DNA of 64,000 nt from the NCBI GenBank assembly GCA_964057225.1, contig OZ059894.1, positions 8,866,001 through 8,930,000 of the forward strand, read 5' to 3'. The position numbers and the translations under genes were made by a program. The stretch comes from Auanema rhodensis (Eukaryota > Animalia > Nematoda). Positions 28,408 through 49,673 of this stretch are shown here, in pieces (the first letter of the stretch is position 1; each line of letters starts with the position of its first letter). A model generated the notes under the pieces. The model searched no databases, was not told the origin of the DNA, and was given only the letters and a program-made list of their open reading frames with translations.

Positions 28408-29523
28408 ATGAAGTTCCTAGCTCTTCTCCTTATTTCTGTTCCAACAATTTCAAATGCATTCTTTATGTTAGGTTTGTATTAATTTTGCACTTTATAATAG
28501 AATTAAACTGAAACTACTTTTGCAGGAACAGGCGGGTGTGGCTGCTCTGCTCCTCCATCATGTCCACCTCCTCCACCACCTCCAGTTTGCGCTCCAGCAC
28601 CAAGTTGTGGCTGTCATGCTGTTGCTCATGGAGCTAGAACAGTGCCAGCATATGCAGCTTTGAAAACTGATGAACTAGACATGGTGAATTTACGTTTTAA
28701 ACATTACATTTATAATATAATGACGGGATAGATTTTTCGTCATCCCGTTACCTTACCTGTACATGAAATCGAGAAAAGCAACTTTGAAATATTTAATTAT
28801 TATGGGAGTCATTTATGTTTATTTAAGCGTGCTACTGCTTTTGGAATTCCTATCCAATCTGATGGTACTAATATCAGAAACATAGAACAGCTCGAGAGAT
28901 TAGGAGAACAGTATGCCCACAATGTAGACGCCTCTTCCATTCCAATCGAAAAAGTTGAACTTTCACATAGACACTTTTGTAATTTGCACTCTAGATTGAA
29001 GATGCTGATCTTTTCGCTGCTTTGAAGAAGAGTACAGATATTCGAAGAGCGCCTGTTGTTTCGGTTACTAAGCAGGTTTAGTTTTTCTCAAGCTTTAGAT
29101 TATTTCAACATTTTATGTGAGCCAAAACTAATTTTAAAAAGAACTTTCACATAAAATATTTAATGTTCTGAAGTTCCAGGATGAGATTACTACAACCACA
29201 GTAGCTACTGAAACAAATAAAGTAAAGGGTGAGGAATCTAAACCAGCCAATGATAAGTGCAACAGTGAAGTTCTCCACAAGCTCATGCTTGAGGTATTTC
29301 TTTTTTTCCGGTAATACTAAATCTCACACTATATTTATAGCATATATCCGACAATTCTTCGGAATCTAAAAGAAAAATCAACGTTGCTGCTGAAGCTAAG
29401 TTCAGTGGAAACGTTGACGTAGTCTGTTCCCGCGGACATTTCTCATACGTCTTTTCTTCAAATTTATACTGCGAAGCCACCAAAGGACTTACAACCTGCA
29501 TAGCTTATCGTCAAGCAGCATGA
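28408..29523 (+). CDS. Hedgehog-related ground-like (grl family) secreted protein
   Basis: Signal peptide; Cys/Pro-rich N-terminus; ground-like domain KCNSEVLHKLM..SKRKI..FSGNVDVVCSRGHFSY..NLYCE..TCIAY. Confidence 0.9.
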
Positions 29524-30734
29524 TCCATCAAACCAATAGAAAAGTGATGATAATAATACTTGATCACATTTAACATAATAAGATTGAATATAATAAATAT
29601 ATATATGTACGTATTTTATATAATCTAACTTTAAAGTTTCATCTAGAAACATTTTCGAAGATAACTTGAATAAGTCTCTTTTTTAAAACCTTGTTTATCC
29701 GTACTTTTTTTATACATTGCATAGAGAATCTTTGGAGATCAATCCTTTAGATTTCGGGACATAAATCAAGTTAAAATCAGCTGTGGTGAAGTTGGTTGTT
29801 CTGGATTTGCGTGATTTATTATTGTATTTTTCTGCACAGTACAGCTTCTCATATTTGGATAATTATTTCAAACTTTTATAATATGAAATATCTTACGATG
29901 CTTTGTGTAAAACATAATAAGTATACAGATGGTTTCTAATTTATATATTCATGTTCAATATTGAACAATTATTTGTGGCAGACGCTTAAAATAGATGATA
30001 AACAAAATTGATTTGTAATAACAGATCGAAATATCCGGAAACAACTGATTGTAGGTGAATTCTATCTTTCTTGTCTAAAGAAAAATAGGTGAATCAATAC
30101 GAACACTTATATGAAAGATTCTAGAAAAAAGTGATGATTCAAATTTCGACACGTATAACTAACAAGCAGCAAATCTTCATAATTGTAGAAAAAAATTATT
30201 TTTCTTTTTGATAGACTATGGGGCATTCATCGAAGTGGCACAATAGAACTTAGAAGTGAGTACATACTTCAATCTAGATGTAATTTGTAAATCAGTTGCA
30301 GCTGAAACATAGTGACAGCTATATCAATACAATATGAGATTTTATATGGTATTTTACATAGTGTTAAATATAAATATGTTAAATAATGTTTTTTTTTAAT
30401 AAATTTTGTTAATTGGCTACAGTCATTGGGGGGGGGGGGCAATTAACAATTAAAGGTCCAATTACAGTGAGCCGGATAATTAGAGCTAAGCCTAATTAAA
30501 GAGTCCTCCGACGAAAAGCTCCGATTGTGAAATGATGCTCTTTATTCAAATCTGAATCAGTTTCTGCTTTTTGAGTAAGCAGTTGTTTTTTTTATCCTAA
30601 AACTATTTAATTGATTTTTTACTTAATTGCTTTAATTGGGTCAATTAAAAATCAATAATTTTATATTTTTTTCTGATTTTTTTAGCAGTTTTGCTCATAT
30701 CTCCTCATCTCTTTTGAAGTCATAGCCAAACTAA

Positions 30735-33700
30735 ATGGGGAAAAAGGTAAAAAGTGTATAAAGTTGCCAATGTAATTCACTTTTTAAAAAATTTAAGAAT
30801 CGACGGCAGAACCAGAATCAATGGGCTGATGATGAACCAGCAGAGCCTGAACAAGTAGCAGAGGTATTCCGAAAAAGAAACAACAAATATAGTCTCATTA
30901 TTAATAGGTATCCTTCAGTCCTAAAACATCGGGAAAAAAGGGCAAAAGGGGGAAAAAAGGAAAGAATCTTACCCATAATGGTTTTTCTACTGGTGCTTTC
31001 GGGGTCTTGGGTGGAGGAGATGAAGATGACAGCATGTGCCAAGTAGATCAAAATTGTTCAGACATGCAAAACTGTGCTCAGGTTTTACTGAATTAGTATA
31101 GTAGTAGCAAGCAGAGTTTTAGGAAAAATTTGAAGAAGATAATTCGTACAAATCTGTTCAGGGGGAGATGCAATATGAGGTCACACCAATCAGCTGGATA
31201 TAACGCAAAGTTTTTTTTAGGCAGCTGGTCAGGATATTGGTTTCACAAACGAGGAATATGAAAACGTGCAAGGAACACAAGATTCCCACGTCGAAAATGG
31301 ATTTGGATCCCAGCATAATGGCTTCGGTGGATCCCAGCATAATGGCTTCGGTGGATCCCAACAGAATGGCTTCGGTGGATCCCGACAGGATGGCTTCGAT
31401 GGATCCCGACAGGATGGTTTTGGTGGATCCCGACAGGATGGTTTTGGTGGATCCCGACAGGATGGTTTTGGTGGATCCCGACAGAATAGTATTAGTGGAT
31501 CCCGACAGAATAGTATTAGTGGATCCCGACAGAATAGTATTAGTGGATCCCGACAGAATGGCTTCGGATCCAATCAAAATGGTTTTGGTGGATCACAACA
31601 GAATGGTTTCGGTGGATCACAACAGAATGGTTCCGGTGGATCCCAGCATAATGGATTTGGTGGATCCCGACAGAATGGATTTGGTGGATCCCGACAGAAT
31701 GACTTTGGTGGATCTCAACAGAATAGTTTTGGTGGATCTCAACAAAATGGTTTTGGTGGATCTCAACAGAATGGTTTTGGTGGATCTCAACAGAATGGTT
31801 TTGGTGGATCTCAACAGAATGGTTTTGGGTCCAATCAAAATTGTCTCGATGGATCACAACAAAATGGCTTTGGATCCAATCAAAATTGTCTCGATGGATC
31901 ACAACAGAATGGTTTCGGTGGATCCCAACATAATGGTTTCGGTGGATCCCAACATAATGGATTTGGTGGATCCCAACATAATGGATTCGGTGGATCCAGA
32001 CAGAATGACTTCGGTGGATCTCAACAGAATGACTTTGGTGGATCTCAACAGAATGGATTTGGTGGATCCCGACAGAATGGCTTTGGATCCAATCAAAATG
32101 GTTTCGATGGATCACAACAGAATGGTTTCGGTGGATCACAACAGAATGACTTTGGATCCCAATGTGATGAATTTGGGTCTCAGCAAAACGGCTTCCAATC
32201 TCGACAAAGTGTTCATGGATCCCAACACAACTGTTTCGAATCTCAGGAAAATGAACTTGATTCCCAGCAGAGAAATGGTTTTGGCTCTCAACAAAGTGGA
32301 GTAAACTCGCACCACAGCGCATTCGGCTCTCAGCACAGCAGACTTAATACTCAGCAAAGTGGTTTTGGATCTTATTCAAATGGTTTTGATGATCAGCAAA
32401 ATGGTATATTTTATATATGTTTTATTTGTGCATTTCTTATTCATCTTATAAACATGCAGGATTTGACTCGCATAGAGAAGATTCGAATTCTCAAATAGAT
32501 AGATTTCCTTCATATCAAAATGGATTGGAAAATCAACATGGTACGAAACCTTCATATTCTTCTGTTTACAGTTTAGTTACAGATGGAGAGCAAAACTATG
32601 AAGATAATTATCAGAGTGAGTTAGGATCTCAATTATCCATAAGAAGTTCTGCATCACGGTGTAACGTAAGGAATTGTGTTCTGAGCAGTATTTATATCAT
32701 TACTGGTTATAGGAGAATGAAAATTACGATCGGCAATCTTATTCGGGCTCTCAAGCTTTGCTAGATGTGATTTTTTTTTCTTCTTCAAACTGTTTTTTAA
32801 TGAATAAAATGTTTAGACTGCTCATCAAGTATCGAGAGGAAACTCGAGAAATCGTTTACCTAGCCACAGTAATTATGATGATCAGTATCTACATCCCGAG
32901 GACAATCGCTCAAGAAGATCATCCATTTCAGTATCCAGTAGAATGTCTGGCGTACGTAGAGAAGTAAGCAGAATACAATAAATCTTTAGAAGATTTTTTT
33001 AAATAGAAACATGATGAAAGATACGGTACATTTGTTACTACCAGAAGTCGACAACCAAGCATTAGTAGCTATCAGGTAATATTCTTTGAATTTGCATATT
33101 TATTGGCACTGTTCAGGGTGAACATTTTGATACTGCCTCAAAATATAGCAGCAACAATGATAGTGCGGAAGCTCCGTCATATCAGCAAAATGTGGATCAA
33201 TTCAATCAAGTTAGGCATGCTGTACATGATTCTCTATTTGATTATGTTTAGATGGTTGGAAATCAACGTAAAAGCAAGTATGGAAGCTGTCAGTTTAATA
33301 CAGGATACGCTTTTTTGCAACCCACTACGAGGAGTCATAGTAAGTCTGTCCACACGTTGAATGCGAACGGAGATTTCAATAAGGTTAATTGTATATTTTA
33401 TCATGAAAGCAAATTGTTATTTTTTCATAGAACTCCGAAAACATGTGTGAAAATAGTTCCCACAACACTTACCGTTCGAACAGTCATATATTTGCCACAG
33501 ATTGTGAGGAAGGTGAAGGAATGGATGGTTTCTCTGAAAACCAGGTAAAATAGGAGAGTGTTTCCATCTCTATAAAAATATTTTAGGTTCCTATACGATC
33601 CATGATGAACGATGAAAAGTGCACAAATCATAGACTAAGCAAGGTACTTACAGAATTCATTTGGTTCTGATACATATTTTTTAAAGCTATCCATAAATAC

Positions 33701-36700
33701 GAATGCTGACGAATTTGTTCTTGTTGGTGGCCAACCTCCTCCAGGCGTGGTAGATGGGCGGTCAAGCTGTCCAGCTGGAAGAAGTCGTCGTTCAAGAAAA
33801 ATGATGAGGTCCACAGACTTTTTGGCTGATCATGAGGAGATGATGGGAGGATCAATCAGATCTACTAGTGCTATGAGTCGTCAGGTTCATTTTCGTCTGT
33901 AATAATTACTTATTTTTTGTACAGTCCTTAAGATCAACTACTGAACATGAGCTTATGAGTATGGGAATTGAAGAAGAAACTCAAGTAAGTTCCCTAGATA
34001 TGATAGTATTAGTGTTATATCACCATTAAGGAAAATTGTAAAGGCAGTCCTGACTATGTTGATACTTTAAGCAACACTGAGCAAGGAGTACGAACTGGTT
34101 CTAATCAGAGTGTTGAGAATTTTGTGGTGAGTTGTCAATGTCTTAATTGATTTTTCGTTTTAAAGACAGCTAATGAGCATTTCGAAAACAACTATTATTC
34201 ATCGGTTACTGGGGTACTTCATGTAAATCTAGGATCAACGGACCTAATATAGCTATCAATTTCAGAAAGCTAATACTGTTAATGGGGAGCAGGAGATTGA
34301 TGTACCATTGAATTCTGATAACAATGAGTTTTTCCAAGATAACACTCAGTTTAATTTGGTTTGTTGTTTTTACTTTATTTTTAGTTATACTCAATATAGG
34401 CTACCTCTGGGAGATCTGCTTCTGTTTCGAGATCTAGTTTGGTATTTATAATCTGTCTTTAAAGCTTTGAAAACTTTTTCTCAGGCATCGAATGCTTCAA
34501 AATCAACAAAATCATTTAACATCAGACAAGATTCTAAAACTAGTCTTGTATGGTTTAAGCTTTACTTCATGAAATAAACAACTTGTTAAGGCTTCCGAAG
34601 CAGCGATGAATGTGAACGATATCAGCAATAATATTGTGAAGTCTCGAACAGCTTCTCGAGCCAGCATGGTATCAAAATTATACCATCGTTGTAAATTGTT
34701 GTTTTCAGTCTGGTATCGATTCTGTTCAGCTCGGATCAGTTGGAAGCGAATTAAAATTACACGTTAGTCTATTTAATAATTAATTTTAGTTCCCGAAATC
34801 GAATTTAGGGTGAGGATGTGCATATACCATTCAATTCTGAGATAAACCATCAGCCAGTTCGGAGTAGATTGAATTCTGAAGTAATTGTTTTCTATAATCA
34901 TATTTTCATTGGGAGTTTTTCAGAGTTCTGAAATTCATATTCCATTCAATTCCGAGTTAAACCAACAATCAGTTCGGAGCAGACTGAATTCTGAAGTAAG
35001 AAGGCTTCTAGAATTATTTTTTTATGGGGACTCTTTCAGAGTTCTGAAATCCATATTCCATACAATTCTGAGATAAACCATCAGCCAGTTCGGAGTAGAT
35101 TGAATTCTGAAGTGAGAATGTTTCGAGATTTTTATTTCATTTACAGTTTTCCAGAGTTCTGAAGTCCATATCCCGTTTAATTCTGAGTTAAACCATCAAT
35201 CAGTTCGGAGCAGACTGAATTCTGAAGTAAGAAGGTTTCTAGTAAGAATGCGGTACTTTTTTTTCAGAATACCGAAGTTCACATTCCTTTGAACTCTGAG
35301 TTATACCAAGAGTCAACTCAAAGCAACTTGAACTGTGATGTTAGTGCATTCATCAATATATTGTTATTAGCGATATTCTAGAACGAAGATGTTTGTATCC
35401 CAGCCAATTATGAATTCAATCAGAAATCCATTCGGAGTAGAACAAATTCCTATGTAAGTTTTCACTTACAATTATTAACTATGTAATTCTATCAAGAGTG
35501 AAAATAATAAAATTCCGTCCCGAACTGAAAGCAGATGTTCAAGTCATCAAAATGTAAATTTTAACATCCTTTCGAATTCAAAGTGTGATTACAATTTGTT
35601 TTTCAGGATCAATTGATTCCTTCAAATGAACCTAACTTTGATATGCGTGGATCTTCACGTCAAAGCTTGGCAAGTTATATATTCAACTTATTGGCTGCAT
35701 AGCTGTGAAATATATACGAATCTTATTGTAATGATCTTTTTTTATAAATGGAATATTTAGACTCGAAATATGTCAGAAAATGAAAAATTATGCGAAAAAG
35801 CTACTTCTCAAGCTAGTCTCGTGAGTTTCTATATTTTCCAGTTTCATATCTTAGTTATCACTTCTAGGTACCGTCAAATATTGGAAGATCGTCACACGAT
35901 GTTCAGGTAGTTGAGTATAGTTTTTGTTCTTTCCTTATTGCTTCTTAGGGTTCACGTTTATCGTTGAGTCAACGCAGTCGTTCCGCATCACAATACAGCA
36001 TGGTTATTGTTCTAGATTTCTTGAAAATAATAAAATATTTTCTAGGGATCACGCATGTCTGAACGGGCGGAACCGTTTAAGGCAGACTCTTCACGTAGCA
36101 TTGTATGATTCAATTCTTTTTAATTGCACTAATTTTATTTCTAGAATTTGGAAAAAGATGCTCTAGAGAATGCTTCAAGTAGTCACATTAATGAAGAGTT
36201 TCGATTACGATCCAATATTGGTTCAACCTCTAGCATTGTAAGGTTTTATATTTTTCACTAAGCAATAGCTTTTTCAGAAATCAAAAATGTCGTCAAGTAT
36301 TGATCACTTTACCCCAAGCAGAGCATCATCTAAGTTAAGTATTGTAAGATTTACTATAATCAGATGTTTGCTACGAAATATTTTCAGAATTCTAAGAATG
36401 GTGATATTGTAAACGAAGATGAATTTGTTCGCAGTCAAGCTCCATCAGCCATAAGCATGGTATATAAATGCTTGTTATCGCTTTTTAAATGAATAATTGC
36501 AGGATGACAGGGAACTGTCTCGATCAAATTATTTACAGAAACAGAACTCTGGTTACAACTTACAATATGTAGGTTATAATAGTAGGCCACATATGATTTG
36601 TTATTTTAAGAGCTCAGTTGATAGAATCGATACTGTTGAACCAAATAATCGAAGCAGATCCGTTTCTGCTTTCAGCCATGTTCCTATACAATGCGTAATG

Positions 36701-39700
36701 AATTTTTTATATTTCTTATTTAGAATTCAAGAGATGATGTTTTTATTCCGAATGAATGTGCTCAGCACCGTAGTCGTTCTTCGTCTGAAACAAGCTTAGA
36801 AAACAGAAAGGAAGACCAGGTACCTCCTGTACCAAGAAGTAGAACAACTTCCTATGCCAGTCTGGTAGTTAGATAAATACTTTTTATTTAGAATGTGTTT
36901 ATAATTTCAGAAATCGGGTATTAGCAGAGAATCGTTGGGTCAGAGAGCAAGATCTCAAGCTAACATGGTTTTAAACTATCAGCTTTGCTAATATATAATT
37001 GTTATCTATTTTCAGCAAGATGAGCATTTCCAACAGTCTTTATCGCATCATAGTAGACCAACTTCTCAAGCCAGTTCGGTATTAACATTTCATCTACGAA
37101 TCTGCATAATTTGTTTATTCAGAAATCATTTTCTCGTGGATCCCAGCAGAGTCGAACACACTCACACGTCAGTCTTGTACGTTTATCTATATGCTTATTT
37201 AGTAATTTGAACTTGTAGGCTCGTGAGAATGATGAATATTATAATTTAGCACCATCTAAAGTTTTATCCCATTCCGATTTGGTATATATTGTATTGTGTT
37301 TTATATATATATATATATATATTCCATTTTTAGAATAGAACAACGAATTCTCAGCAACAGAGGTCTTTCACAGGCGTTTTGGTTAGTTTGGTCACTTTTG
37401 CGATTTTTAATAATAACTTTAAGAAGAATTCTACTTCATCTCATTCAATGCATAGGTCTGGTATATTGAGTAGGGCTTCTTCTAAATGTAGCGTGGTATG
37501 CTAAAAAGTAATAAAAACTATTTTTTTTTTGCCTGTTTAGAGCTTCTCACAGCAGGGTCTACATAAAGAGTATGTAGATGAAAACGGGAATCCAATCAAT
37601 TATAGAAGTCGCTCATCATCTTTTGCTAGCATGGTTCAGTTTTTAGTTATAATTTGTTTCATTAAGTTTTGTATAGAACAAAGAGAATGGCGATGATACT
37701 GAAGAAAATTTATTAATTGCTGACTATAATAGTAAAATGGAAAGTCATTGGGAATTGGTAGACTTCACTATATATTTTGATATATTAATTAAATTTTCCA
37801 GCCAACGAGTCGTTGTGCTTCTTCTTTGATGGTTGGACCTCAATCGAATATACCTGATATTGTAGTAGTGTCTCCGGAAGATGAAATAATCGTCCAGGAT
37901 AAGGTCTGGTTTTCAAAAATGCTTCTACCATCTATATAATTTGTTTCAGGCTCCTCGCTCTCAACAGTTACGTACTCCTCCTGCTCTTCGAAAAGCCAGG
38001 ATGCGTTCCAAGTCATCTGTAGATGTATTTCTTGAAGTTTTTTCTTTTTGCTATATATTTTTATTTAGATTGGTAGTGCAGGGATTTCGAATTATAATGG
38101 CGATGAAATTCCTCGTCCTATTATTTTTACGGATGCTTTAACTGTGAGTCACATTATTTCATTTTTTTTTGAATTATATATATTCTCGTTAATTAGTGTT
38201 GAAACGTTTTATTTTTTTACGATTTATCATATCGATTTCTTTTTTTCTGCTATTGTGAAATTTTTAGCCACAAGCAATTGCTCCTAAATCCAGAATTCAA
38301 AAAGATAAGTCGGAATCAAAGGTGAGATAAACTTAGCTGTTCATTTTTTGATGGAATAATTTTAGCAATGCTCTGAAATTGCAATTCAAACGGGTGAAAC
38401 TATACGTCTTCGACAGATGGCTGACTTTTCAACTTTTGGTACTACGCTGACGTCTTATATATCTTTAAAAAAAACATTCAGAATCTTCTACTGATGAACA
38501 GCCATCAATTGATCAAATCAATCGTGTTTTTTCAAAAAAAACTACCCAGGTTTTACACACACACACACACACATGGTATTTATACTAGTGGATTTTTAGC
38601 ATCCTGTTGCTCAGGTTCTAACGAATTTCCTCCAACAACAAAATAATTTGAACCAAAGTGCTAACAAATCTAATCATCAAGTTACTGTATTGCATGCTGA
38701 TGATAACGTAAGCTTTCGGTTTATTTTCTTACATCGTAATTCTTTCAGGACGAAACTGATGCTAATCATAATAAGTTCATTCGATCCAATAACGTGAAAG
38801 AGACCTCCAATGATAGCAAAAAACCATGGGACTTGGTAGGTGCTGTGGAAGTCGTTCCTAAGGAAGTTGCTGCTGAAATGAGGGATCAGGTACGAGGAGT
38901 AGGTGGGACCTCGCTGCTTGTATTATGTTGCCAATCACTAGGTGCTTGCTGAATCAAAACTTCCTCAAACTCCAACTAGTTGTCGGATTGCAAAAAGCAA
39001 ATTTGATGAATTCGAAAAGTATTCTAGAGAGGTTTCAGCATTTCAAAACCTTGAAAACGTTCCATATTCTATTTTTTAGGAAAGTTCTTATGATAGTCCA
39101 AATAAGAGAAATACTACAAATCAGTCAAACAGTTGAGTACTTGTTTGAATTATTTGAACAATCATACTTTCAGCATCTAATAATAGTGGATCATACCGTT
39201 GGGTTGTAAGTGATCCTAAAAAAGAAAATAAAGTTCCGGATGTTAAATGGTCAGATGGTCGAAAAAGAGAACCCGGTTATACAGTTCGGTAATCTGTTTC
39301 ATTACTAAATACTGTTTCAAATAATCTACTATAGGCAAAATGTTCGTGCTGGAAAGATCAGGGATTTGGCATCTATGTTTAATGACATGCAACATCAAGC
39401 GAGCAAAGAAGAAGCAATGTTGAAGTTGAAGTCTCTCTCAAATGATGAAAATAATAATGAAGAAATGCAATCAATGTATCATAAAAAAATGATATTAGGT
39501 ATGAATTTATATTCTAAAACTGTATCCTGTTATATTGCAGAAGAACCTGATCATTATCATGGAGATTATCATATCGATGATAATAGAAAAACAGTTACAT
39601 CCGAGAGAAAATATTATCCAATTACATCAACTGTTGATAGACATAGGAACTGCTGGTATTACTCGAATGAGTAAGAAATAAGTAAATCTACTTTGATATG

Positions 39701-42508
39701 GTTGTTCTTCAGTCTTGATGATGCGCTACTTGATGTAAATGACGAATCCGAACGAGGAAGTGTCATTGATCGCCACAGAACATCTACACCGTTAAATGAT
39801 TACATGGATCATGGTAAGGGATTTCATTATATTTTTATAATGTGATGTTTTAAGAGAATATGGCACATCAGTTTAGAAGAATACCATCGATCAGAGCTGA
39901 TGAACCTCCGGTTACTATTACTCGGCATATATCTTCCCCTCACAGAGAAACACAAATGTAACCAACTTCTATGTTTTACTAATAATTTATATTCTACTTC
40001 AGTAGAAGCAACTCTTCCAATATTGATAGAAGTACCAATAGTTTCAATTATGTTTCTAGAGGCAACGTGTCAGCACCGCCTTTGCCATCTAATCAATATG
40101 CTCAAATCAAGAAATATCCAAAGAAAACGTTTGTTTTAAGTTATCTCTATATATGAAGCTGTTTTATTTTATAGTGATGACTACGCTGAAATTTATTATC
40201 CATCTGATTCTACCCATGGAAAGTACTCGATAGATGAGAGAAACAAAGTATATACAGTATTATTTTATTCAAACCTTTTTATTTTTTAGTCTCTGGCTGA
40301 TGGTGACAGACATTCTAGTTTGAGAGAATCTGGGCAATTTCCTACTGACCATCAATTACGTCGACGCACTTCTCGTGGTAGTGAACATCCTTCCATTACT
40401 AATTCACAAAAGTCTCGGTTCGATGACATCATAGAGGAAACTGTTAATGATCACATAGATAATTTATTCCAGTTTGTAGACGTATGTTGAGTAATTGTTA
40501 TTATAACTAATGCTTGTAATTAAGGAACAACCTAAAAATAATAATCCTCCCTCATCAAAATCCTCCTTGCACTACTCAGTAAGCAACAACAGTTTATAGA
40601 GTTCTAGCTTTTTCATTGCAGATAAGTGGTTATCGTGCCATGCAAAAGTCTAATAAGGTACCTCAGGATGAGCCGCCTGTTCGGTTTTCCCCCTCGGTTG
40701 CTCCCCATGTTTCAGAGTTATCCGAGTGCTCAATCTCTCGATTGAGGAAAAAAGTTATATCCTTACTTTGAGTATTTTAAGAACCTTTTTTTAGGATTCA
40801 CTTGGATCAAATAATGGCTTCATGAGTCCACACCGATTTGGCGGTCGACCAGCTGATTTAATCGCATCCACCCCGAAATCCAGTCCAACACATAGACCTC
40901 CACCTGCTTTGGAAGAGTCTTATGTAAGCAGCATTTCTGAGGGTAGCCGTCATGAAGAGAGAATGGGGGAATACAAGCGATTGTTTAATGTAAGTTTAAC
41001 ATATGATAGTTAGGTTTTACCAGTATACTTTAAGAAATTGGTTCACCAAATCGAAGTTTGCAAAGAACAAATTGACATGACGCATAAAGTTCTTCTTAAA
41101 GCTCGGAAGGAGAAAAAACCTATGCAGGAAGTAAGAAAGACATTGTTTCTAAGTTTACAAATTTAATATAGCTCACAGCTCAAAGAAGTAATTTGATCAC
41201 TACTCAAAAAATTATGCTACTTCGTCGAGAACTACAGCATGTTCAAGGAATTCTACAGGTTAAATTAAAATATGAATATGTTATGACACATTTTGATTAT
41301 AGTTGAAAAAACAGCCTCCCCAATTGAATCATGATTTACGAGGATCCATGTCCATCTCTAATATCACTCTATTTTTAAATAGAGGCATCTCTCAGCGTAT
41401 TGGTGATAGTATGTTGAATTGAATCGAATTGAAATATTTGTAATTTGGTTTTTTATCAGATTCATCGTTTGCGTTTGTTGTTGTTCTCAAATCAGGATGT
41501 GAGCTAGAGGCAACAGCACCTGTAACTTTGCTATTCAATTATCATAATAGTCTGAAGCTTCATTTCGCTGAAAAGATTAGTTTTTATAATCTTCCAATAG
41601 ATTTCAGCGTTGAACTTGAGGTTTATGTTATGGTAGGTTGAGATCATCTATTCAGATCAAAGTATATTTTAAAGGTGTTGCCCGAGATGAAGAATGATGA
41701 AAATTCTTGCGCAACTACAATTGCGAATAAGTGCAGGAATTTACTAGGACCAGGTAATAAAAAAAATAATTTTATTAAAATGAGGGATATTTCTAGGTCG
41801 CAAAAATCATTCAAACACTGGTTTGCCTGTTGGTGATTTTGTTCGTTGTGGCTATCTTCGTCTTAATAGGTTTTAAATTCAAAGCAACGTAATTAATATT
41901 GAGTTAAGGGACACTACTATTCATGATAAGTTCTATTTGGATGACGCTCAATATCCGTTAGAAGGAACTATTGCTGTTACTTCTTCTTGCACTAGTCTTC
42001 CTCCAGCTATTGAAGTAGACTATAGAGGCTTTTTGGCATGTTCTTTTATATGCTTGAGCAATTTTGATACATGTTTTCAGACAATGTATCAATCAGTAGC
42101 AGGAGGATCTTGGGAGAGATATTGGGCCGCTTTACGCTGTGGATCTATATATTTTTGGAAATATCCTGAAGAAGATACGATGGGAAAAGTGGTCAACTTT
42201 ATTCGTTCTCAATAAATAATTTTCAATTTCAGCCACCCAAAGCTCACTTGCAGCTTCAGTCTTGCACAAAAGATGTGATAGTTCCTTGCACCTTGGATCA
42301 ATGTGCTCGGCCTTACGCGTTTACTATCGAAATTTTGGTTTCTACTGCTCCTTCGGTAATGAACAAGAAGAGGTACGGATATAGACTAACTATAGAGATC
42401 CATTTTTTTTTTTTTTTCAGAATTATATTAGCAGCCGATTCACGTGACCTTATGTGTTCATGGATTGATGCAATTAACGAAATGCTTAGTGTTATTCGCG
42501 AGCATTAA
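30735..42508 (+). CDS. ani-2: Giant anillin (ANI-2-like) with N-terminal FGG repeats and a small-exon-encoded Ser/Arg-rich disordered region, ~80 exons
   Basis: Manual stitching gives one frame from ATG 30735 to TAA 42508 with no internal stop. The C-terminus has a coiled coil, an anillin domain (FYNLPIDFSVELEVY; YPLEGTI) and a PH domain (GSWERYWAALRCGSIYFWKYPEE..IILAADSRDLMCSWIDAINE), most like recalled C. elegans ANI-2. Confidence 0.8.
31296..32200 (+). repeat. Coding 24-bp tandem repeat encoding (Q/R)(Q/H)NGFGGS
   Basis: Unit about CAACAGAATGGTTTTGGTGGATCC/T. About 23 FGG and about 33 FG dipeptides counted across the single exon 31221-32403. Confidence 0.95.
34809..35453 (+). repeat. Six tandemly duplicated 72-nt exons with their introns
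   Basis: Each exon encodes about SSE(I/V)HIPFNSE(I/L)NHQ(P/S)VRSRLNSE and is flanked by AG/GT; copies 5 and 6 are more diverged. Confidence 0.9.
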
Positions 42509-43019
42509 AAACTAATTTAATAATAGTCTCCTCATATTTATGCTCCAACTAACTATCTTTAATTAATATTTTTTGTTGAATTTTCTTTGTTAGTTGTTTT
42601 GATAATAAAACTTTTTGTTAAATGAAAATATTTATAGCTTTTACTTATGTAAGATACAGATTTAAAAATATTTTTTTTTGTAATTTCTTCTTTTTCTACG
42701 TTACTCACAGAACTATTTCATTTCGAGCGCGTGATACAATTTTTCTACATTAGGAACCAGGCAATTATTCAAACGATTAATTCAAAATATTGAATTGATT
42801 AAATAAATAATTGAGGTAAAATTGTTTAAGGAAATCTATTTTAATGAAAACTTTAAATGATTGAACGCCAATGTTGGTGTCGAGTTGCGCTCCACTTGTA
42901 ACGACAATTGGCGTCTAGTCAGCTGATTTTGCGACTGAGCGTGCCTTTATTACCCCAGCTTTTTTTCATGTGATATATATTCACGTTGTATTTTCAGCTT
43001 ATTTTGCATTGGAATATTA

Positions 43020-46000
43020 ATGTGGACTTCTAGAAATAGGAGATCTTATCAAGTTTGTTGTTATAATTATTTTATTTTTTTAATTGATAAAGTATTAGGT
43101 TATCGATGATGGTTATGAAGATTCCATTCCCGAGAACTTCACCGCCGCAGCCGGTCAATCTCTCCACAGTCGTATATTTGGTGGAAGTGAATCTGAACCA
43201 CTGTAATTTGAAATATTTAATTGAGTTTTAAATTTTTTTTAGAATATCTACTAGTCGTGATTCTTATAATTCACCTGGTCATGTGAACCAGCCAACTTTA
43301 GAGCCTCCTCAAATGGGCAGCAGTAGTAGGATTGATGAACGAAGATGGGATCATATTGAAGATTTAGATCAAGTTTGTTGCTCTTTTTTATTCTCAATTT
43401 CTATATAATATTGTAGTTTTTCTCGAGAATTTATGAATATCATCAAGGAGGTGGATTTATGTGCATAACTTTCCGTAAGATTTTGGGTATTCTACAATTT
43501 ATTTTTGTTGTGGTAAGTATTAATTATAAAGCTCTTTTTTAAAACTCTTATAGTTTTTCTCCACTTTCTTCTTGCAATGTGTAAATTATGATGTTATGTT
43601 CGCCAATGTAAATATAACTACTAGTGGTCAAGCTATATCGGGGAAAAGGCATTTCAGTGTAAGTATTAAATTTTTCTTCCTAATGTGTGAAATTGTAATT
43701 ATTTTGTTTTTAGGATGTTGTAATTCCAAATTGCGCAACTCACTTACACCCTTTTGTCGTGCTTTGCTTGTTATTCTCAACTGTATTCTGTATGCTTCGG
43801 ATTGTAAAGTCAATGTATTATATCCTGCAGATGCATGAGGTTTTTGTTTTTTTCCTATAATATTATATATCTCGCTTTAGATAAGCTCTTTCTATGGAAC
43901 TGCTCTTGGAATCACTGATTCCCAACTGGCCAACCTTACCTGGCATTCTGTTGTCAAACAAATTTGCGCCGTACAACCTAGACTGCATTTGACAATTAAT
44001 AAAGATGTACTGGAGCCTGTCGATATCTATAATCGAATTTTACGTTTCAAAAATTATTTTGTTTCCTTTGTTAACCAGGTAATTGTTTTCTAATCTTCCA
44101 GCATTATTCTCTTTATTTCAGCGTATTTTTCCTCCGGTTTTCGACATTCCATTTGTTGGAAAAACTGCCTATCTTCCAAATGGGTTAAAATACAATATAA
44201 AACGTTGTCTATTTCTAAGTTCAACATCTCCTTGGAATGGACCCTGTCTTAAAGAAGATTATAAAGATCCCGAGTTCCTTGATCGTTTAAGCACTCAGAT
44301 GGAGAAGCATGTTAGTTTCTTGCTTTTGTCAGATATAAAGCTTATTATTACAGATTTTGTGGTATGGCATGATTAATTTGGTCTTATTTCCTTTTATTTT
44401 TGTATATCAAATTCTTTATTCATTCTGTGTTATATCAGAAATGATCAAGAAAAATCCAGATTCACTTGGAAGTCGCAGATATTCTAATTTTGGAAGGTAC
44501 ATTCAAGATTGTCTTCCTATATTTTTGCTCATACACATATATTTTCAGATATCGGCTTCGGCACTTCAATGAATTAACACACGAGTTGGATGCCCGTTTG
44601 AACAGATCCCACAATTTTGCCAATGCTTATGTTAATCAATTTTTCTCTCCCCTTTTGAAGGTTTTTCGAGATTCACTGCTTACCCTAAACTAAGAATTGC
44701 TAGGTTATCGCTACCCATATTCGGTTTATGGTAGGAGCTGTTGCTATTGTATTGGGAGCATTAACTATGTGGGACGAGGATGTCATTCAAGTATTTAATA
44801 ACGATTAGAGTATTTGATTCATTTTTCTTTTTTTGAGATTGAACATGTATTGACGGTTATTGCTGTTTGTGGAGGAATCTTTATTTTCTGCAATAGCTTA
44901 ATTCCCGATGAGAATCTAGTTTGGCAACCAGAAGGCCTACTCAATCGAGTAGCATCTGAAATCCATTACGTTCCTGTGGAATGGAAGAATAATGTACTTA
45001 TCTTTCTCTTATTTTAATAATCGAAGTGCTCATATTTAGGCACATACTGAACAAGTTCGGCATGAATTTATGGAACTTTTCCAATTGAAGTGGATGTTTT
45101 TGGTGCATGAATTGTTTAGTCCTATATTCACACCTTTCATTCTTATTTTCTGGTAAACAGTATCAAGATGAAAGTTGTCTAGACACATGTTTCAGGCTCC
45201 GTCCTCGCTGCAGGGAAATTGTTCGTTTTTTCAATGAAAACACAGTTACTGTGCAAGGCTTGGGAGACGTATGTTCCTTTGCTCTACTGGATGTATCGCG
45301 TCATGGTGATCCAACTTGGAGTGGAGTACAAACTTCGCAACGTAATGGTATATTAAGTATTAATAATGAATATCATAATGTTTATTTACAGATGTACGTG
45401 CATTAGATGGAAAAACGGAAATGTCCGTTTTACATTTCATGTCAACTAACCCAGAATGGGTTCCTCCTCCTTCCACAGAACAGTTTATTAAGACTTTCAA
45501 GGATAGAGTAAGAATATCAATGAGCTTATTCTGATTTTATAATTTGAATTTTAGCTTTCTCGTGAAGTAAATGAAATGAACGAAAGTAGAACAAATTTAT
45601 TACGAGAATCTGTTAATTCTCTTCTTCCGACCGGAACAACTGCAGCTACTCCCTTATTAGGTAAATCGTTTATAAGTATTGATTTGAAAGTTATGTTCCA
45701 GGTAACGGTTTACCCAAAATTGATGGACCAGCTCCTCTGTTATGGGATTCTCTGAACAAGAATAATGGTTCATTGGTTGACAGTCTAAGAAGACCAGGTA
45801 TGTGAAGATTAAAAAGCTCTGTTGTATAATTAACATTTGAGAAGCTGACGGTAGTGTCAGTAGTGACCTCCGAGTTCAAACTATGTTTTTACGTGGTATG
45901 CATGATGAAATCAAGCAAAGTATGGCACCTTCAATGTATGGAACAAATGTATATAGTGTAAATAATCCGAGCCGTAGTCTTTTCGAAGTTCCACAATTAC

Positions 46001-46189
46001 GGGATGACAACGAAGGTTGGTTTGCTTCAAAGGATTCTTATATTCGGCTTTGTAGATTCACAAGTGGACACCGAAACAAGAAGTCGACTTGTCCAGAGAG
46101 GCGCTCCTCCAGTCACCTACGATGAACGAGAGGAAGATGAAGCCGACCACAACGATGATCAGCCACCCACTTCTTTTATGGGTGTTTGA
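43020..46189 (+). CDS. atg-9: Autophagy protein ATG-9
   Basis: RWDHIEDLDQFFSRIYEYHQGGGF; FLQCVNYD; NRILRFKNYF; RHFNELTHELDARLNRS; GLGDVCSFA; DGKTEMSVLHF. Confidence 0.95.
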
Positions 46190-46564: not shown

Positions 46565-47931
46565 ATGAAACCTAAATCTGTTCAAAAAATACCTTCAAAA
46601 AGGAAGCAGGTAATCACGCTTTCTTCTCGAGAGACTGATGATTAATTGCAGGAAGTGGATTGTGAAGATGACGAACAAATTAGCCAAATCAAGCAAAAAA
46701 AGATAACCAAAACCAAGAAAATTAAAAAGGTGAAGAAGGTTGTTGAGGAGGAAGTTACAGAAGAAGTTGCGGACGAAATTGCGGATGAAGTTACGGAAGA
46801 GAAGGATGTTAATGATGATCCTTCCGGTTCCGAGGACGAAGAGGATATATCAGAAAAGTTCAGACAAAGTTTGCGAATACCGTTACTGCTCTTTCACAGT
46901 TTCTCTTGTTTTCAGATATGGCTAACCTCCCTCTTAGTAAAGTACGAGAATTAAAAGATAAATTAGGTATTAAACTTTTCAACAAAGCTTATTTTGGTAT
47001 ATCCGATGAGAAAAGCACTAGTGAATCCCAAAAAAAAGAATCAAGTTCTTTCACAGCCAAGGTTTTTTAACTTGAAAATAAGTGTCATTTTCTGATGTTT
47101 CTCTTTTTAGCCTAAGGCCCAGCATCGACCAAAAGAAATTTCATCAAGAAAGAAAGTCTCCGTCTTTAGAAATATTTATCCTGAAGCTCAAGACAAAAGG
47201 TGAGTTTTTTAAAATTGTTATAATTTACTTCTGTCTATTCATCAGAAAGAGAGATCCACGGTTCGACGAACGAGGAGGAACATTCAAAGAATGGTGCTTT
47301 GAAGACAACTATCAATTCTTAAATGATATTAGGAAAGAAGAAAAAGATGTAAGTTCATTACTTATTAGTATCAAATAGGTCAGGTAATACGGTATTTTAT
47401 TTTTTAATTGCATTGTCGGCATAAACGGTTGAGCTTTTTAATGTGAAACAATTTTATAACTCAATGTAATTATTTTTTCAGGAGCTCAAGAGACAATTAA
47501 AGCATGCTGTTGAAAACGATGATGTTGAAACAACTGGAAAGATTTCTGAGGTTTGGCTACAACTTTGTTTTTTCCTTTACATCTGTTTTAGGCTATTCGT
47601 CGACTGGATGATCAGGAAAGAGCTCGAAAGGAGAAACAATTAAAGAAGGATGCTATGAAAGAAATTCGTGAAGAAAATATAGGAAGAATGATGGCCGGAG
47701 AAAGGCCAGTCTTCAAAACTAGAGGTAAATTTGTTGTAATACAGAGCCTTTTCATCAAATTCCTTGTTTGCAGCTGAAGTACGCATGAAGGTGATTGAGA
47801 AGAAATATGATCAGCTAAAGGGAGAGAACAAATTGGGCAAGTATTTAAAGAAGAGCGCTCAGAAGAAAGCCCAAAAAGAGAAAAGACAAAAACCACCCAT
47901 AGGTTTCGAACAAAAGTATGGTTACCAATAA
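46565..47931 (+). CDS. RRP36: rRNA processing protein RRP36 (DUF947)
   Basis: Acidic/basic N-terminus; HRPKEISSRKKVSVFR; KRDPRFDERGG; NYQFLNDIRKEE; GERPVFK; KYDQLKGENKLGKYL. Confidence 0.88.
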
Positions 47932-48011
47932 TTTGTTGTTGTTTTTGTTTTCAATTGTTATGTTGTTGATAAAATTATTTTATTGATATCAATATATGTT
48001 ATATGTACAAT

Positions 48012-49673
48012 TTATTCCTGCTTTACATCAGAAGAACACTGAACTTTTACAGGGAACCATGTTGATCCTGGGTTAGTGAAACGAATAATATATTCTCCTG
48101 GAGCAACCATTACAGAACCTGATTCAGGCAACTGAAATTTAATGATTTATAAGAATGAGAGATGGAGACCTTACTTTAAGAGATGCGATAGTTATTTTTG
48201 GCCAAACGTGCTTTTCTTTTCCACTTTCCCTCTTCAAAATTTCAAACTGGACATCTCCGCTGGTCGTGAAACTCCATATTAATTGGCCAGATGACGAAGT
48301 TTTTCTAAAGACAAAAGGTTAAAATGAGAGAACGAGATTGTACTTCATACTTGATAATTTCATGACTGTGAAGGCTTTTAATGCTCATGCTTTTAGCGGC
48401 TGGAGGTTGAACAAATCCATTTTCGGTCCAGATGAAATCAGACTGTAAAAATAATAATGATGAAACTTCCCATATCACTTATATACTTGTTTGATATGAG
48501 AAGGAAGAACAGCAAGAGGTTCTCGACAACACCCTTCGGGTGGATTTGAATAGCCGCTGTTATCAACCCATGTTCCACCATATTGTTTAGGAATAACCTT
48601 AAACATTTTTCTCATATTATATGTCATTTCCACTATATATTACTTGTGGCTCTAAGTAAAACTTCAAATCTTCTGGTGAGTTAAGGAATGATATTCTGGA
48701 CAATGTTCGGGGATCCATGATCAATTTAGTAATTTTCCACATTAAAGAGACAATTCCTGGAGGATTTATAATCAATATTTTACACATCTGAAGTAATAAA
48801 ATTCAATTAGTATATTATTAGAAAAATTTTTGTTTTTACATTTTCACTGAAATAGTCTGCCCAAACTTTTACTACGGTTTTGGCTAGTTTAACTTGTGGA
48901 GATAATGGATTGATAAACTCAGAAATGTTCAATCCAGCAAGGTCCAAAACACAAACAACGGAAGATGGTTTCCCTAAAAACATCTGATATTAGTATATTA
49001 TTCAATAAGTGTCATTTTATCTGAGGGAAAATTAACAAACCAGTTTTTTTTTCAGTATTCGCTACTACGCGTCCGAATACATCTTGGAGCAAGAAATAGG
49101 AATGAACAACATGAGAAAGAGGAAGAATTTTCATAATCTAGATAGAATCTTTAAAAATCAAAATTCAAAATTTACTCACTTGGGTCAAATCTGTTCCTTC
49201 TAATTTTTGAACAAACACATGAACATTATTTGAAACAAGATTCTGTTCAACAAGAGAAATATTGAAGCGCTTAAATGTTATTTATAAATAATAATCTTTT
49301 CTATGTGATCAGTTACTTCGAATGTCTCTTTTCCGATTGGAATTTCATTGAAAATACCCAGTTGGTTATATTCTCCGTATCGCAGACAGCTACGATGTGT
49401 AAGATATTCTGAGAGTCGTTCTCTGGCTGGAAAACGAAACATAGCAAACAAATCTTCAAATGAATAACTTGCATACCTAATTGAACATCTCCATTGTTGG
49501 CATTTAAGAATCGAGCAATAAAGAAGGGTGAATCAAGAGCAGCTGGAATATCGAAGACTTTTCTAAACAGAAGGTACATTACATGTCTGTAGATATATAC
49601 AAATATACCTGAGTTCGGCAGCTTTGTCTAATATTTCAGATGAAAATGGCTGAGGAGTAATCGATTCCACCAT
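48012..49673 (-). CDS. SEC14-like CRAL-TRIO plus GOLD domain protein
   Basis: FIARFLNANNGD; VVCVLDLAGL; ILIINPP; IPKQYGG; GOLD-like WSFTTSGDVQF..PGEYIIRFTN. Confidence 0.85.

What the first reader, a model, noticed from the sequence alone, without database searches (positions are those of the whole stretch)
30735..42508. Giant anillin carrying a GLH/nucleoporin-type FGG-repeat domain
Seen: a 1.18-kb exon with about 23 FGG (about 33 FG) repeats of unit QQNGFGGS. It is joined in one open frame, through about 80 exons with no stop or intergenic gap, to an ANI-2-type anillin and PH C-terminus (roughly 2,600-2,700 aa, estimated). Known: C. elegans ANI-2 (about 1,000 aa as I recall) keeps germline ring channels open, and FGG repeats typify GLH P-granule helicases and FG nucleoporins, which form selective phases. 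I know of no FG-repeat anillin. Inference: a Rho/membrane-anchored anillin projecting an FG/QN-rich tail could act as a permeability sieve at germline intercellular bridges, or tether germ granules to the cortex or cleavage furrow.
Basis: partly seen in the sequence, partly recalled or inferred. Interest (0 to 1): 0.9.

Follow-up and report, generated by a model that had tools for sequence, protein, structure and literature searches.

The report
Worm anillin with FG-repeat domain
This roundworm's cell-division scaffold protein anillin really does carry a long run of phenylalanine-glycine repeats as dense as those of nuclear-pore and germ-granule proteins; its sister species has the run too, other worms lack it, and nobody has tested what it does.

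Summary
A 24-bp unit repeated 36 times (31304-32155) sits in one 1,183-bp exon. It encodes SQQNGFGG units, giving 33 FG and 23 FGG in that exon. My gene model joins this exon in frame to an anillin-homology plus PH C-terminus: 80 exons, 2,715 aa, median intron 43 nt and no gap above 124 nt.

The annotated orthologue in Auanema sp. JU1783 (2,175 aa, three isoforms) has the same layout, an even larger FG array and the same neighbouring genes. A conserved N-terminal motif upstream of the FG exon also occurs in long anillins of Caenorhabditis relatives, one of them read from an intronless transcript contig. The array is therefore intragenic.

Repeat units show purifying selection in the coding frame only (pN/pS 0.33-0.44). 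About 60 other nematode anillins have no FG array.

The protein is not ANI-2-type: it branches before the Caenorhabditis ANI-1 / ANI-2+3 split. Giant size is not unusual, since 1.6-2.3 kaa anillins are common.

The proposed function (a sieve, or a germ-granule tether) is untested. The likeliest role is a cohesive low-complexity module that raises self-association of anillin's disordered N-terminal half.

It is a new variant of a known family, restricted to this lineage and not described in the literature I searched. The scan had already noted the middle exon array of this same stretch.

The parts
30735..42508 (+). Whole coding span of the anillin gene: 80 exons, 2,715 aa (2,696 aa without exon 4)
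   Evidence: Gene model. It aligns end to end with Auanema sp. JU1783 protein P0001 at 61% identity over 2,000 aligned columns.
30735..31081 (+). Exons 1-3: conserved N-terminus, MGKK... and the motif THNGFSTGAFGVLGGGDEDDS
   Evidence: Nearly identical in JU1783. The motif is shared with C. auriculariae P0008 and with the transcript-derived P0007.
31123..31179 (+). Exon 4, 57 nt, phase 0; uncertain
   Evidence: Weak donor (2.6 bits) and no counterpart in the JU1783 model. Skipping it keeps the frame.
31221..32403 (+). Exon 5, the FG exon: 1,183 bp, 33 FG and 23 FGG; composition G 26%, Q 18%, S 16%, N 12%, F 10%; charged residues about 10%
   Evidence: Codon log-odds trained on the rest of the gene give +207 bits in this frame, against +49 and -118 in the other two.
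31304..32155 (+). Core minisatellite: 24-bp unit x 36 copies encoding S-(Q/R)-Q-N-G-F-G-G
   Evidence: TRF; pattern search gives 21 matches against 0 expected; pN/pS 0.44 within the array.
32460..34126 (+). Exons 6-17: serine-rich disordered region holding the conserved block NHRLSKLSINTNADEFVLVGGQPPP (exons 14-15, 33587-33884)
   Evidence: Collinear with JU1783 and with C. auriculariae residues 586-664.
34166..37633 (+). Exons 18-48: array of short phase-0 exons encoding S/R-rich modules (E-V-H-I-P-x-N ... R-S-R-x-x-S); almost wholly absent from the JU1783 orthologue
   Evidence: Alignment gap over model residues about 895-1585; exon phases; similar modules occur in Caenorhabditis long anillins.
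34821..35242 (+). Tandem exon-plus-intron cassette: 115-bp period x 3.7 copies (72-nt exon plus 43-nt intron)
   Evidence: TRF; exons 24-28 of the model.
37677..40753 (+). Exons 49-69: conserved central region with motifs FTDALTP, IAIQTGETIRLRQ, RAGKIRDLASMF, IDNLFQFVDE and SGYRAMQ
   Evidence: High identity to JU1783; collinear HSPs to P0007, P0105 and P0008.
40795..42035 (+). Exons 70-77: anillin homology domain (coiled-coil Rho-binding part plus C2-like part)
   Evidence: Pfam PF08174 at 36.4 bits on 41444-41638. 76% identity over 414 columns to P0001, which scores 50.6 bits for Anillin.
42036..42080 (+). 45-nt GC-AG intron between ...YRGFL and TMYQ...
   Evidence: Read directly from the sequence. 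Its removal restores the RGFLTMYQ junction present in P0001 and in other anillins.
42081..42505 (+). Exons 78-80: C-terminal PH domain
   Evidence: Partial PF00169 matches of 18.0 and 13.2 bits on intron-split pieces. The orthologue P0001 scores 48 bits for PH.
42506..42508 (+). Stop codon TAA; a candidate AATAAA signal follows at 42604-42609
   Evidence: Sequence read.

Best explanation
This is the canonical anillin gene of an Auanema-type nematode. It is a pre-duplication co-orthologue of Caenorhabditis ANI-1, ANI-2 and ANI-3, built like the long ANI-1-type proteins. A 24-bp coding minisatellite has grown in place inside its long disordered N-terminal half. It probably arose from an ancestral N-terminal FG-containing motif, either HNGFSTGAFG or SFGGS(Q/R). 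The result is a domain of 365-540 aa with one phenylalanine every eight residues, set in G/S/Q/N spacers with few charges. The C-terminal AHD+PH end anchors the protein to RhoA and the membrane. The FG array most likely acts as a cohesive, multivalent 'sticker and spacer' module. Such a module would raise self-association or condensation of anillin N-termini at the cortex. It might also bind FG-binding partners such as importin-beta-type receptors or GLH/nucleoporin FG networks. Shown: gene structure, orthology, lineage restriction, and selection on the peptide. Inferred: every functional step.
For: One gene:
- The exon chain is open from 30735 to 42508, and the largest non-coding gap is 124 nt.
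- The JU1783 orthologue is annotated as one protein with three isoforms and the same architecture, in a syntenic locus: the same upstream gene, then ATG9, RRP36 and CRAL_TRIO downstream.
- The N-terminal motif upstream of the FG exon and the motifs downstream are collinear with C. auriculariae P0008.
- The N-terminal motif also occurs in P0007, which is encoded without introns on a 7,117-nt Logan contig, i.e. on one mRNA.

The array is coding and under constraint:
- pN/pS is 0.44 (window), 0.33 (JU1783) and 0.34 (between species) in the coding frame, against 0.8-2.8 in the other frames.
- For the GFGG codons alone it is 0.30-0.51.
- Codon usage favours the FG frame.
- The two species use different synonymous codons for the same motif.

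FG density:
- The window protein has 22 FG per 200 aa and JU1783 has 23; every other anillin has 4 or fewer.
- The published working criterion is at least 5 per 200 aa, and the top C. elegans proteins reach 20-21 (PMC8311347).

Mechanistic precedent:
- The disordered N-terminal half of C. elegans ANI-1 is required for and sufficient to form self-associating linear structures. Phase separation was proposed there, and the disordered Mid1p N-terminus forms condensates in vitro (PMC10548094).
- FG repeats of GLH-1 and nucleoporins drive co-clustering of P granules and nuclear pores (PMC12050070; PMC3063144).
Against: I found no transcript or protein data for the window species, so inclusion of exon 5 in the main mRNA is inferred. 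The JU1783 model is itself an annotation whose evidence I could not inspect. A pN/pS of 0.3-0.5 is only moderate constraint, and the units were selected with a protein-level pattern on positions 1-4. Restricting the test to positions 5-8 gave the same result. Array length and unit pattern differ between the two species (36 units of 8 aa, against a roughly 16-aa double unit over about 540 aa). Fast repeat turnover in a tolerant disordered region would also produce that. Nothing shows where the protein localises, that it condenses, or that it binds transport receptors.
Confidence: 0.5

Rival explanations
1. Neutral repeat expansion. The FG array is a slippage-driven minisatellite tolerated in a disordered segment. 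It is translated but has no role of its own, and its FG content is a by-product of the seed motif.
For: Units are 84% alike at the DNA level. Units within the window array are more alike (pS 0.38) than units between species (0.61), which suggests recent growth or homogenisation. The length of the disordered region changes fast in this gene: the window has about 690 aa of S/R modules that JU1783 lacks, and JU1783 has the longer FG array. No other nematode anillin needs such an array.
Against: pN/pS is below 1 only in the coding frame. The same 8-residue motif is kept in two species whose proteins are only 61% identical overall, and it is kept with different synonymous codons. The array persists at several hundred residues in both lineages.
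Confidence: 0.3
2. Specific FG-phase function. The array would form or join a selective FG phase. That could be a sieve in germline intercellular bridges, a tether between cortex or furrow and P granules or nuclear pores, or a platform that recruits importin-beta-type receptors to the ring.
For: FG density equals that of GLH-2 and FG nucleoporins. The low charge and N/Q-rich spacers resemble cohesive FG domains (plus general knowledge of GLFG nucleoporins). In human cells anillin is already regulated by importin binding (PMC7353161, PMC5683762). A tree places this as the pre-duplication anillin, so it presumably also covers the germline-bridge role that ANI-2 has in C. elegans (the role itself is an inference).
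Against: There is no localisation, interaction or expression data. The gene is not ANI-2-type. FG-rich low-complexity segments also occur in proteins with no transport or granule role, such as keratins and filaggrin-2 (PMC8311347).
Confidence: 0.12
3. Gene-model artefact. The FG exon belongs to a separate upstream gene or to a rarely used alternative exon, and the main anillin mRNA lacks it.
For: There is no RNA evidence for this species. A word-based search with the FG exon found no transcript fragments. No annotated protein from this genome turned up. Exons 5-7 together are a multiple of three (1,347 nt), so skipping them would keep the frame.
Against: The N-terminal exons conserved in other long anillins lie upstream of the FG exon. 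There is no stop codon and no gap above 124 nt. Skipping exon 5 alone shifts the frame. All three JU1783 isoforms keep the array. The peptide is under selection.
Confidence: 0.06

Closest known systems
Auanema sp. JU1783 unnamed protein CAI4231292.1 (P0001; isoforms of 2,164, 2,175 and 2,177 aa)
   Same: It is the orthologue. It has the same N-terminus, an FG array of the same 8-residue motif, collinear central motifs, AHD+PH (Pfam 50.6 and 48 bits) and the same flanking genes.
   Different: Its FG array is longer (about 540 aa, 44 FG), alternates SRQSGFGG with SQQNAFGG, and is split by one intron. It lacks about 690 aa of S/R module exons present in the window. Overall identity is 61%.
Long Caenorhabditis anillins, presumed ANI-1 orthologues (C. 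remanei GCK72_009081 1,719 aa; C. bovis 1,993 aa; C. auriculariae 2,322 aa; C. sp. 36 1,796 aa)
   Same: They share the MGKK/MGRKKGK start and a long serine-rich disordered N-terminal half with phi-x-I-P ... R-x-R-x-x-S modules. The central motifs are collinear and the C-terminus is AHD+PH. C. auriculariae also keeps the HGGFSTGAFG motif and one SFGGSQQ unit.
   Different: None has an FG array (at most 13 FG and at most 2 FGG in total; at most 4 FG per 200 aa in those windowed). They form one of two sister Caenorhabditis clades, and the window gene branches outside both. I did not retrieve C. elegans ANI-1 itself, so 'ANI-1' here rests on exclusion of the named ANI-2 and ANI-3 clades.
C. elegans ANI-2 (Anillin-like protein 2, 1,009 aa, P0092)
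   Same: AHD+PH C-terminus.
   Different: It has a short, unrelated N-terminus (MYRRE...PPQLKSPPP) and 3 FG in total. It lies in a Caenorhabditis-specific ANI-2/ANI-3 clade that excludes the window protein.
GLH-1/-2/-4 Vasa-class helicases and FG nucleoporins
   Same: Dense FG/FGG repeats in a low-charge disordered segment. Density matches GLH-2, at 20 FG per 200 aa (PMC8311347). These repeats mediate FG-FG cohesion at P granules and pores (PMC3063144, PMC12050070).
   Different: There is no DEAD-box helicase, zinc knuckle or nucleoporin anchoring domain; Pfam finds only Anillin and PH in the orthologue. The resemblance is in composition and motif, not in ancestry.

Membership tests
Anillin | Anillin homology domain (Pfam PF08174) near the C-terminus | tested here: met
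   36.4 bits (cut-off 24) on the single exon piece 41444-41638. The orthologue P0001 scores 50.6 bits.
Anillin | C-terminal PH domain directly after the AHD | tested here: met
   The window pieces score 18.0 and 13.2 bits, each below the 25.1 cut-off because introns split the domain. The spliced model is 76% identical over the C-terminal 414 columns to P0001, whose PH scores 48 bits. I could not scan the spliced window protein itself.
Anillin | Long disordered N-terminal half carrying actin- and myosin-binding regions | tested here: inconclusive
   Composition is serine-rich and low in complexity. Motifs such as RAGKIRDLASMF are collinear with Caenorhabditis long anillins. No binding region was mapped.
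   The window and JU1783 proteins branch outside the Caenorhabditis clade (100/99 support) that contains both the long group and the ANI-2/ANI-3 group; their own placement has 82/80 support.
   The window protein starts MGKKNRRQNQ, like the long anillins, and has 2,715 aa.
FG-repeat domain (working definition of PMC8311347) | At least 5 FG dipeptides within 200 residues | tested here: met
   22 FG per 200 aa and 35 FG in total. The criterion was read.
FG nucleoporin | A nucleoporin anchoring or structured domain, and residence at the pore | tested here: not met
   Pfam finds only Anillin and PH in the orthologue. Localisation is not testable here.
FG nucleoporin | Binding of nuclear transport receptors to the FG motifs | not testable with these tools
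   This needs binding assays.
GLH/Vasa germ-granule helicase | DEAD-box helicase core with CCHC zinc knuckles next to the FGG repeats | tested here: not met
   No helicase or zinc-knuckle match in P0001 or in the window pieces. Only the FGG repeat feature is shared.

The most novel reading that the evidence does not exclude
The FG array makes anillin a cortex-anchored member of the cell's FG-cohesive network. From the RhoA/membrane-bound C-terminus it would project a Nup98/GLH-like phase. That phase could gate traffic through germline intercellular bridges, hold P granules or pore-derived material at the furrow, or recruit importin-beta-type receptors to the ring without an NLS. Any of these might be linked to the unusual asymmetric germline divisions of Auanema.
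Probability: 0.1. Interest if true: 0.85.

Novelty: new variant of a known kind. Interest (0 to 1): 0.5.

Why it matters
Anillin's disordered N-terminal half has recently been shown to self-assemble and to be enough for furrowing when actin is scarce (PMC10548094). What drives that self-association is still open. In this lineage, nature has inserted several hundred residues of a textbook cohesive FG sequence into exactly that half and has kept it under selection in two species. That offers a natural gain-of-cohesion allele for comparison with FG-free orthologues. It also extends the list of proteins outside the pore and germ granules that carry pore-grade FG domains. If the array binds transport receptors or GLH/nucleoporin FG domains, it would link the cytokinetic and bridge cortex to the FG network.

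Tried and rejected
- My first dynamic-programming gene model over-split real exons: 101 exons and a start off by one base. I retrained it on its confident introns and codons, then corrected two junctions by hand against the orthologue.
- A word-indexed search with the FG exon found nothing at E <= 1e-5. This is uninformative, because the query is low-complexity and the search has a length window.
- A search with P0001 residues 700-2175 returned only P0001 and one Ascaris protein. No annotated protein from the window's own genome was found.
- An exact look-up of P0001 found no locus. The longest isoform, P0065, did.
- Weak Pfam matches on exon pieces (Gp5_trimer_C on the FG exon, MH2, GM130_C) are all below their cut-offs, and I discarded them as compositional noise.
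- A Pfam scan of the neighbouring-gene pieces failed on a stop codon. I did not repeat it, so the neighbour identities rest on the JU1783 annotation and tblastn.
- I considered and rejected N-myristoylation of the MGKK start: lysine at position 3 does not fit the consensus as I recall it, and I did not test this.
- I considered the 124-nt intron at 38144-38267 as a possible operon boundary. I rejected it because the conserved TDALTP/SALTP motif spans that junction in JU1783 and in transcript-derived Caenorhabditis proteins.


Full report
**What is there**

The window is AT-rich animal DNA, 27-38% G+C. Tandem Repeats Finder reports a 24-bp unit repeated 36 times at 31304-32155, with 84% matches and score 871. 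The consensus unit occurs 21 times at up to 3 mismatches, against none expected, and every match lies inside the array. In the one frame that continues into the flanking exons, the array reads S-(Q/R)-Q-N-G-F-G-G. The exon runs from 31221 to 32403 (1,183 bp) and holds 33 FG and 23 FGG.

At the other end of the region, a single exon piece (41444-41638) scores 36.4 bits for Pfam Anillin, above the cut-off of 24. The last exons give partial PH matches.

**Gene model**

No gene finder was available, so I wrote a dynamic programme over GT/GC-AG introns, open frames and codon log-odds.
- After retraining on its 46 confident introns, it gave 79 exons and 2,714 aa.
- Two junctions were then corrected by hand against the sequence and the orthologue. 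One is a 39-nt intron at 41870-41908; the other moves the donor to 42188.

The final model has 80 exons and 2,715 aa. The ATG is at 30735 and the stop at 42506-42508. Median exon length is 74 nt, median intron 43 nt, and the longest intron 124 nt.

Some parts are less certain:
- Exon 4 (31123-31179) has a weak donor and no counterpart in the orthologue. It may not be real, but it is a multiple of three.
- The 45-nt intron at 42036-42080 begins GC. It is needed to restore the RGFL|TMYQ junction found in other anillins.

**Is it one gene?**

A phmmer search with the exon piece 41877-42212 against 1.84 billion representative proteins found 63 hits. The best was P0001, 2,175 aa, from Auanema sp. 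JU1783. It has two further isoforms of 2,164 and 2,177 aa.

- P0001 aligns with my model from the first residue to the last, at 61% identity over 2,000 aligned columns. It carries an FG array at the same position.
- Its locus (L002) has the same neighbours as the window: a conserved upstream gene, then ATG9, RRP36 and a reverse-strand CRAL_TRIO gene.
- The N-terminal exons upstream of the FG exon encode MGKK... and the motif THNGFSTGAFGVLGGGDEDDS.
- That motif recurs in C. auriculariae P0008 (2,322 aa) and in P0007 (2,214 aa).
- P0007 is encoded without interruption on a 7,117-nt Logan contig, which means a single mRNA.
- BLASTP hits between my model and P0008 are collinear from exon 3 to exon 79.

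The FG exon therefore lies between sequences that share one transcript in relatives. No stop codon and no gap longer than 124 nt separates it from the anillin domain. The 124-nt intron is spanned by the conserved TDALTP/SALTP motif. I found no RNA data for the window species itself, so inclusion of exon 5 in its main mRNA remains an inference.

**Is the array coding and constrained?**

Codon log-odds trained on the rest of the gene give +207 bits for the FG frame, against +49 and -118 for the other two frames.

| Comparison of 8-codon units | pN/pS, coding frame |
|---|---|
| Within the window | 0.44 |
| Within JU1783 | 0.33 |
| Between species | 0.34 |

The two shifted frames give 0.8-2.8. 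I had selected the units with a protein-level pattern on positions 1-4. Repeating the test on the GFGG codons alone gave 0.30-0.51.

The two species favour different synonymous codons for the same motif: TCC against TCT for Ser, and TTT against TTC for Phe. Units within the window are more alike (pS 0.38) than units between species (0.61). This suggests recent growth or homogenisation in this lineage.

**How unusual is it?**

Among roughly 60 nematode anillins of 700 aa or more that I retrieved, only the two Auanema proteins are FG-rich. The set covers Caenorhabditis, Mesorhabditis, strongylids, ascarids and filariae.

| Protein | FG total | FGG total | Max FG per 200 aa |
|---|---|---|---|
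| Window | 35 | 24 | 22 |
| JU1783 | 44 | 32 | 23 |
| All others | at most 13 | at most 2 | at most 4 (the nine windowed) |

A published working definition asks for at least 5 FG per 200 aa. It lists 21 (K01A6.4) and 20 (glh-2) as the top C. elegans values (PMC8311347).

The array is 26% G, 18% Q, 16% S, 12% N and 10% F, with about 10% charged residues. No paper in the library joins anillin with FG repeats in a relevant way, and none mentions anillin in Auanema.

Great length is not unusual: the Caenorhabditis long anillins run from 1,615 to 2,322 aa.

**Which anillin is it?**

A maximum-likelihood tree of the last 430 residues places the window and JU1783 proteins together (100/100). They sit outside a Caenorhabditis clade (100/99) that splits into two groups. 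One is the long group; the other holds the named C. elegans ANI-2 and C. remanei ANI-3. The placement outside that clade has 82/80 support.

So the gene predates the Caenorhabditis duplication and is not ANI-2-type. Its N-terminus and central motifs match the long group, which by exclusion should be ANI-1. I did not retrieve C. elegans ANI-1 itself. No second Auanema anillin appeared among the 63 hits. That is weak evidence for a single gene.

**Origin of the array**

Caenorhabditis long anillins have a single SFGG(S) or SFG unit about 80-100 residues after the N-terminal motif. Examples are ESFGGSQQ in C. auriculariae and NSFGGSRSS in C. bovis. The conserved N-terminal motif itself contains HNGF...FG. 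The Auanema unit (Q/H)-N-G-F-G-G-S resembles both, and the array sits where the single unit does. In-place amplification of an ancestral motif is the simplest reading. This is an inference.

**How it probably works**

The C-terminal AHD and PH domains are the RhoA-, membrane- and septin-binding end of anillins (established knowledge; summarised in PMC10548094). In C. elegans the disordered N-terminal half of ANI-1 is required for self-associating linear structures. When targeted to the membrane, it is also sufficient to form them. The authors of that work suggest phase separation.

An array of evenly spaced phenylalanines in G/S/Q/N spacers with little charge has the composition of cohesive FG domains. 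I therefore favour a role as a multivalent cohesive module that strengthens self-association of anillin at the cortex.

Binding to FG-binding partners is possible. GLH-1 and nucleoporin FG repeats co-cluster P granules and pores (PMC12050070, PMC3063144). Human anillin is regulated by importin binding (PMC7353161, PMC5683762). None of this is shown for this protein.

The main rival is a translated but functionally neutral repeat in a fast-changing disordered region. The two species differ by hundreds of residues both in the FG array and in the S/R module array.

**Verdict**

The single-gene reading is well supported by comparison but lacks direct RNA evidence. The 'ANI-2-type' label and the implied novelty of giant size are not supported, and the proposed function is untested. 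The feature is a lineage-restricted new variant of anillin. It is already present, unnamed, in a public annotation of the sister species, and it is not described in the literature I could search.

According to an earlier scan note, the genome is Auanema rhodensis. My own evidence shows only that its closest relative in the databases is Auanema sp. JU1783.

Noticed in passing
window 43017-46186 (+): An ATG9 gene starts about 500 nt after the anillin stop, on the same strand. The adjacency is kept in Auanema sp. JU1783 (L002). In Ancylostoma and Necator, several proteins in the anillin cluster are named 'Autophagy-related protein 9', which points to fused models. This may be a conserved anillin-atg-9 operon.
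   Followed up: partly
window 34166-37633 (+), with the tandem cassette at 34821-35242: About 31 short phase-0 exons encode S/R-rich modules (E-V-H-I-P-x-N ... R-S-R-x-x-S, a basophilic RxRxxS pattern). Some are recent exon-plus-intron duplicates with a 115-bp period. The JU1783 orthologue lacks nearly all of them, while Caenorhabditis long anillins have related phi-x-I-P modules. Every exon is frame-neutral, so combinatorial skipping is possible, but I have no evidence for it.
   Followed up: partly
window 30735-42508: Introns are extremely short and uniform: median 43 nt, and most are 39-50 nt. At least one is a GC-AG intron supported by homology (42036-42080). A second predicted GC-AG intron (35670-35760, 91 nt) has no support from homology.
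   Followed up: partly
window 30908-31081; P0008 residues 54-77; P0007 residues about 66-77: A short N-terminal motif, (T/S)H(N/G)GFSTG(A/V)FG followed by an acidic run, is conserved between Auanema, C. auriculariae and an unidentified species (Logan run SRR33369742). It is degenerate in other Caenorhabditis. Its function is unknown, and it may be the seed of the FG array.
   Followed up: partly
window 46915-47928 (+) and 48001-48576 (-): RRP36-like and CRAL_TRIO-like genes follow ATG9 in the same order and orientation as in JU1783.
   Followed up: no
window 28822-29520 (+): A gene of unknown identity upstream of the anillin gene is conserved with JU1783 (up to 83% identity in translated pieces). 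About 1.1 kb of non-coding sequence, including a G12 run near 30436-30447, separates it from the anillin ATG.
   Followed up: no
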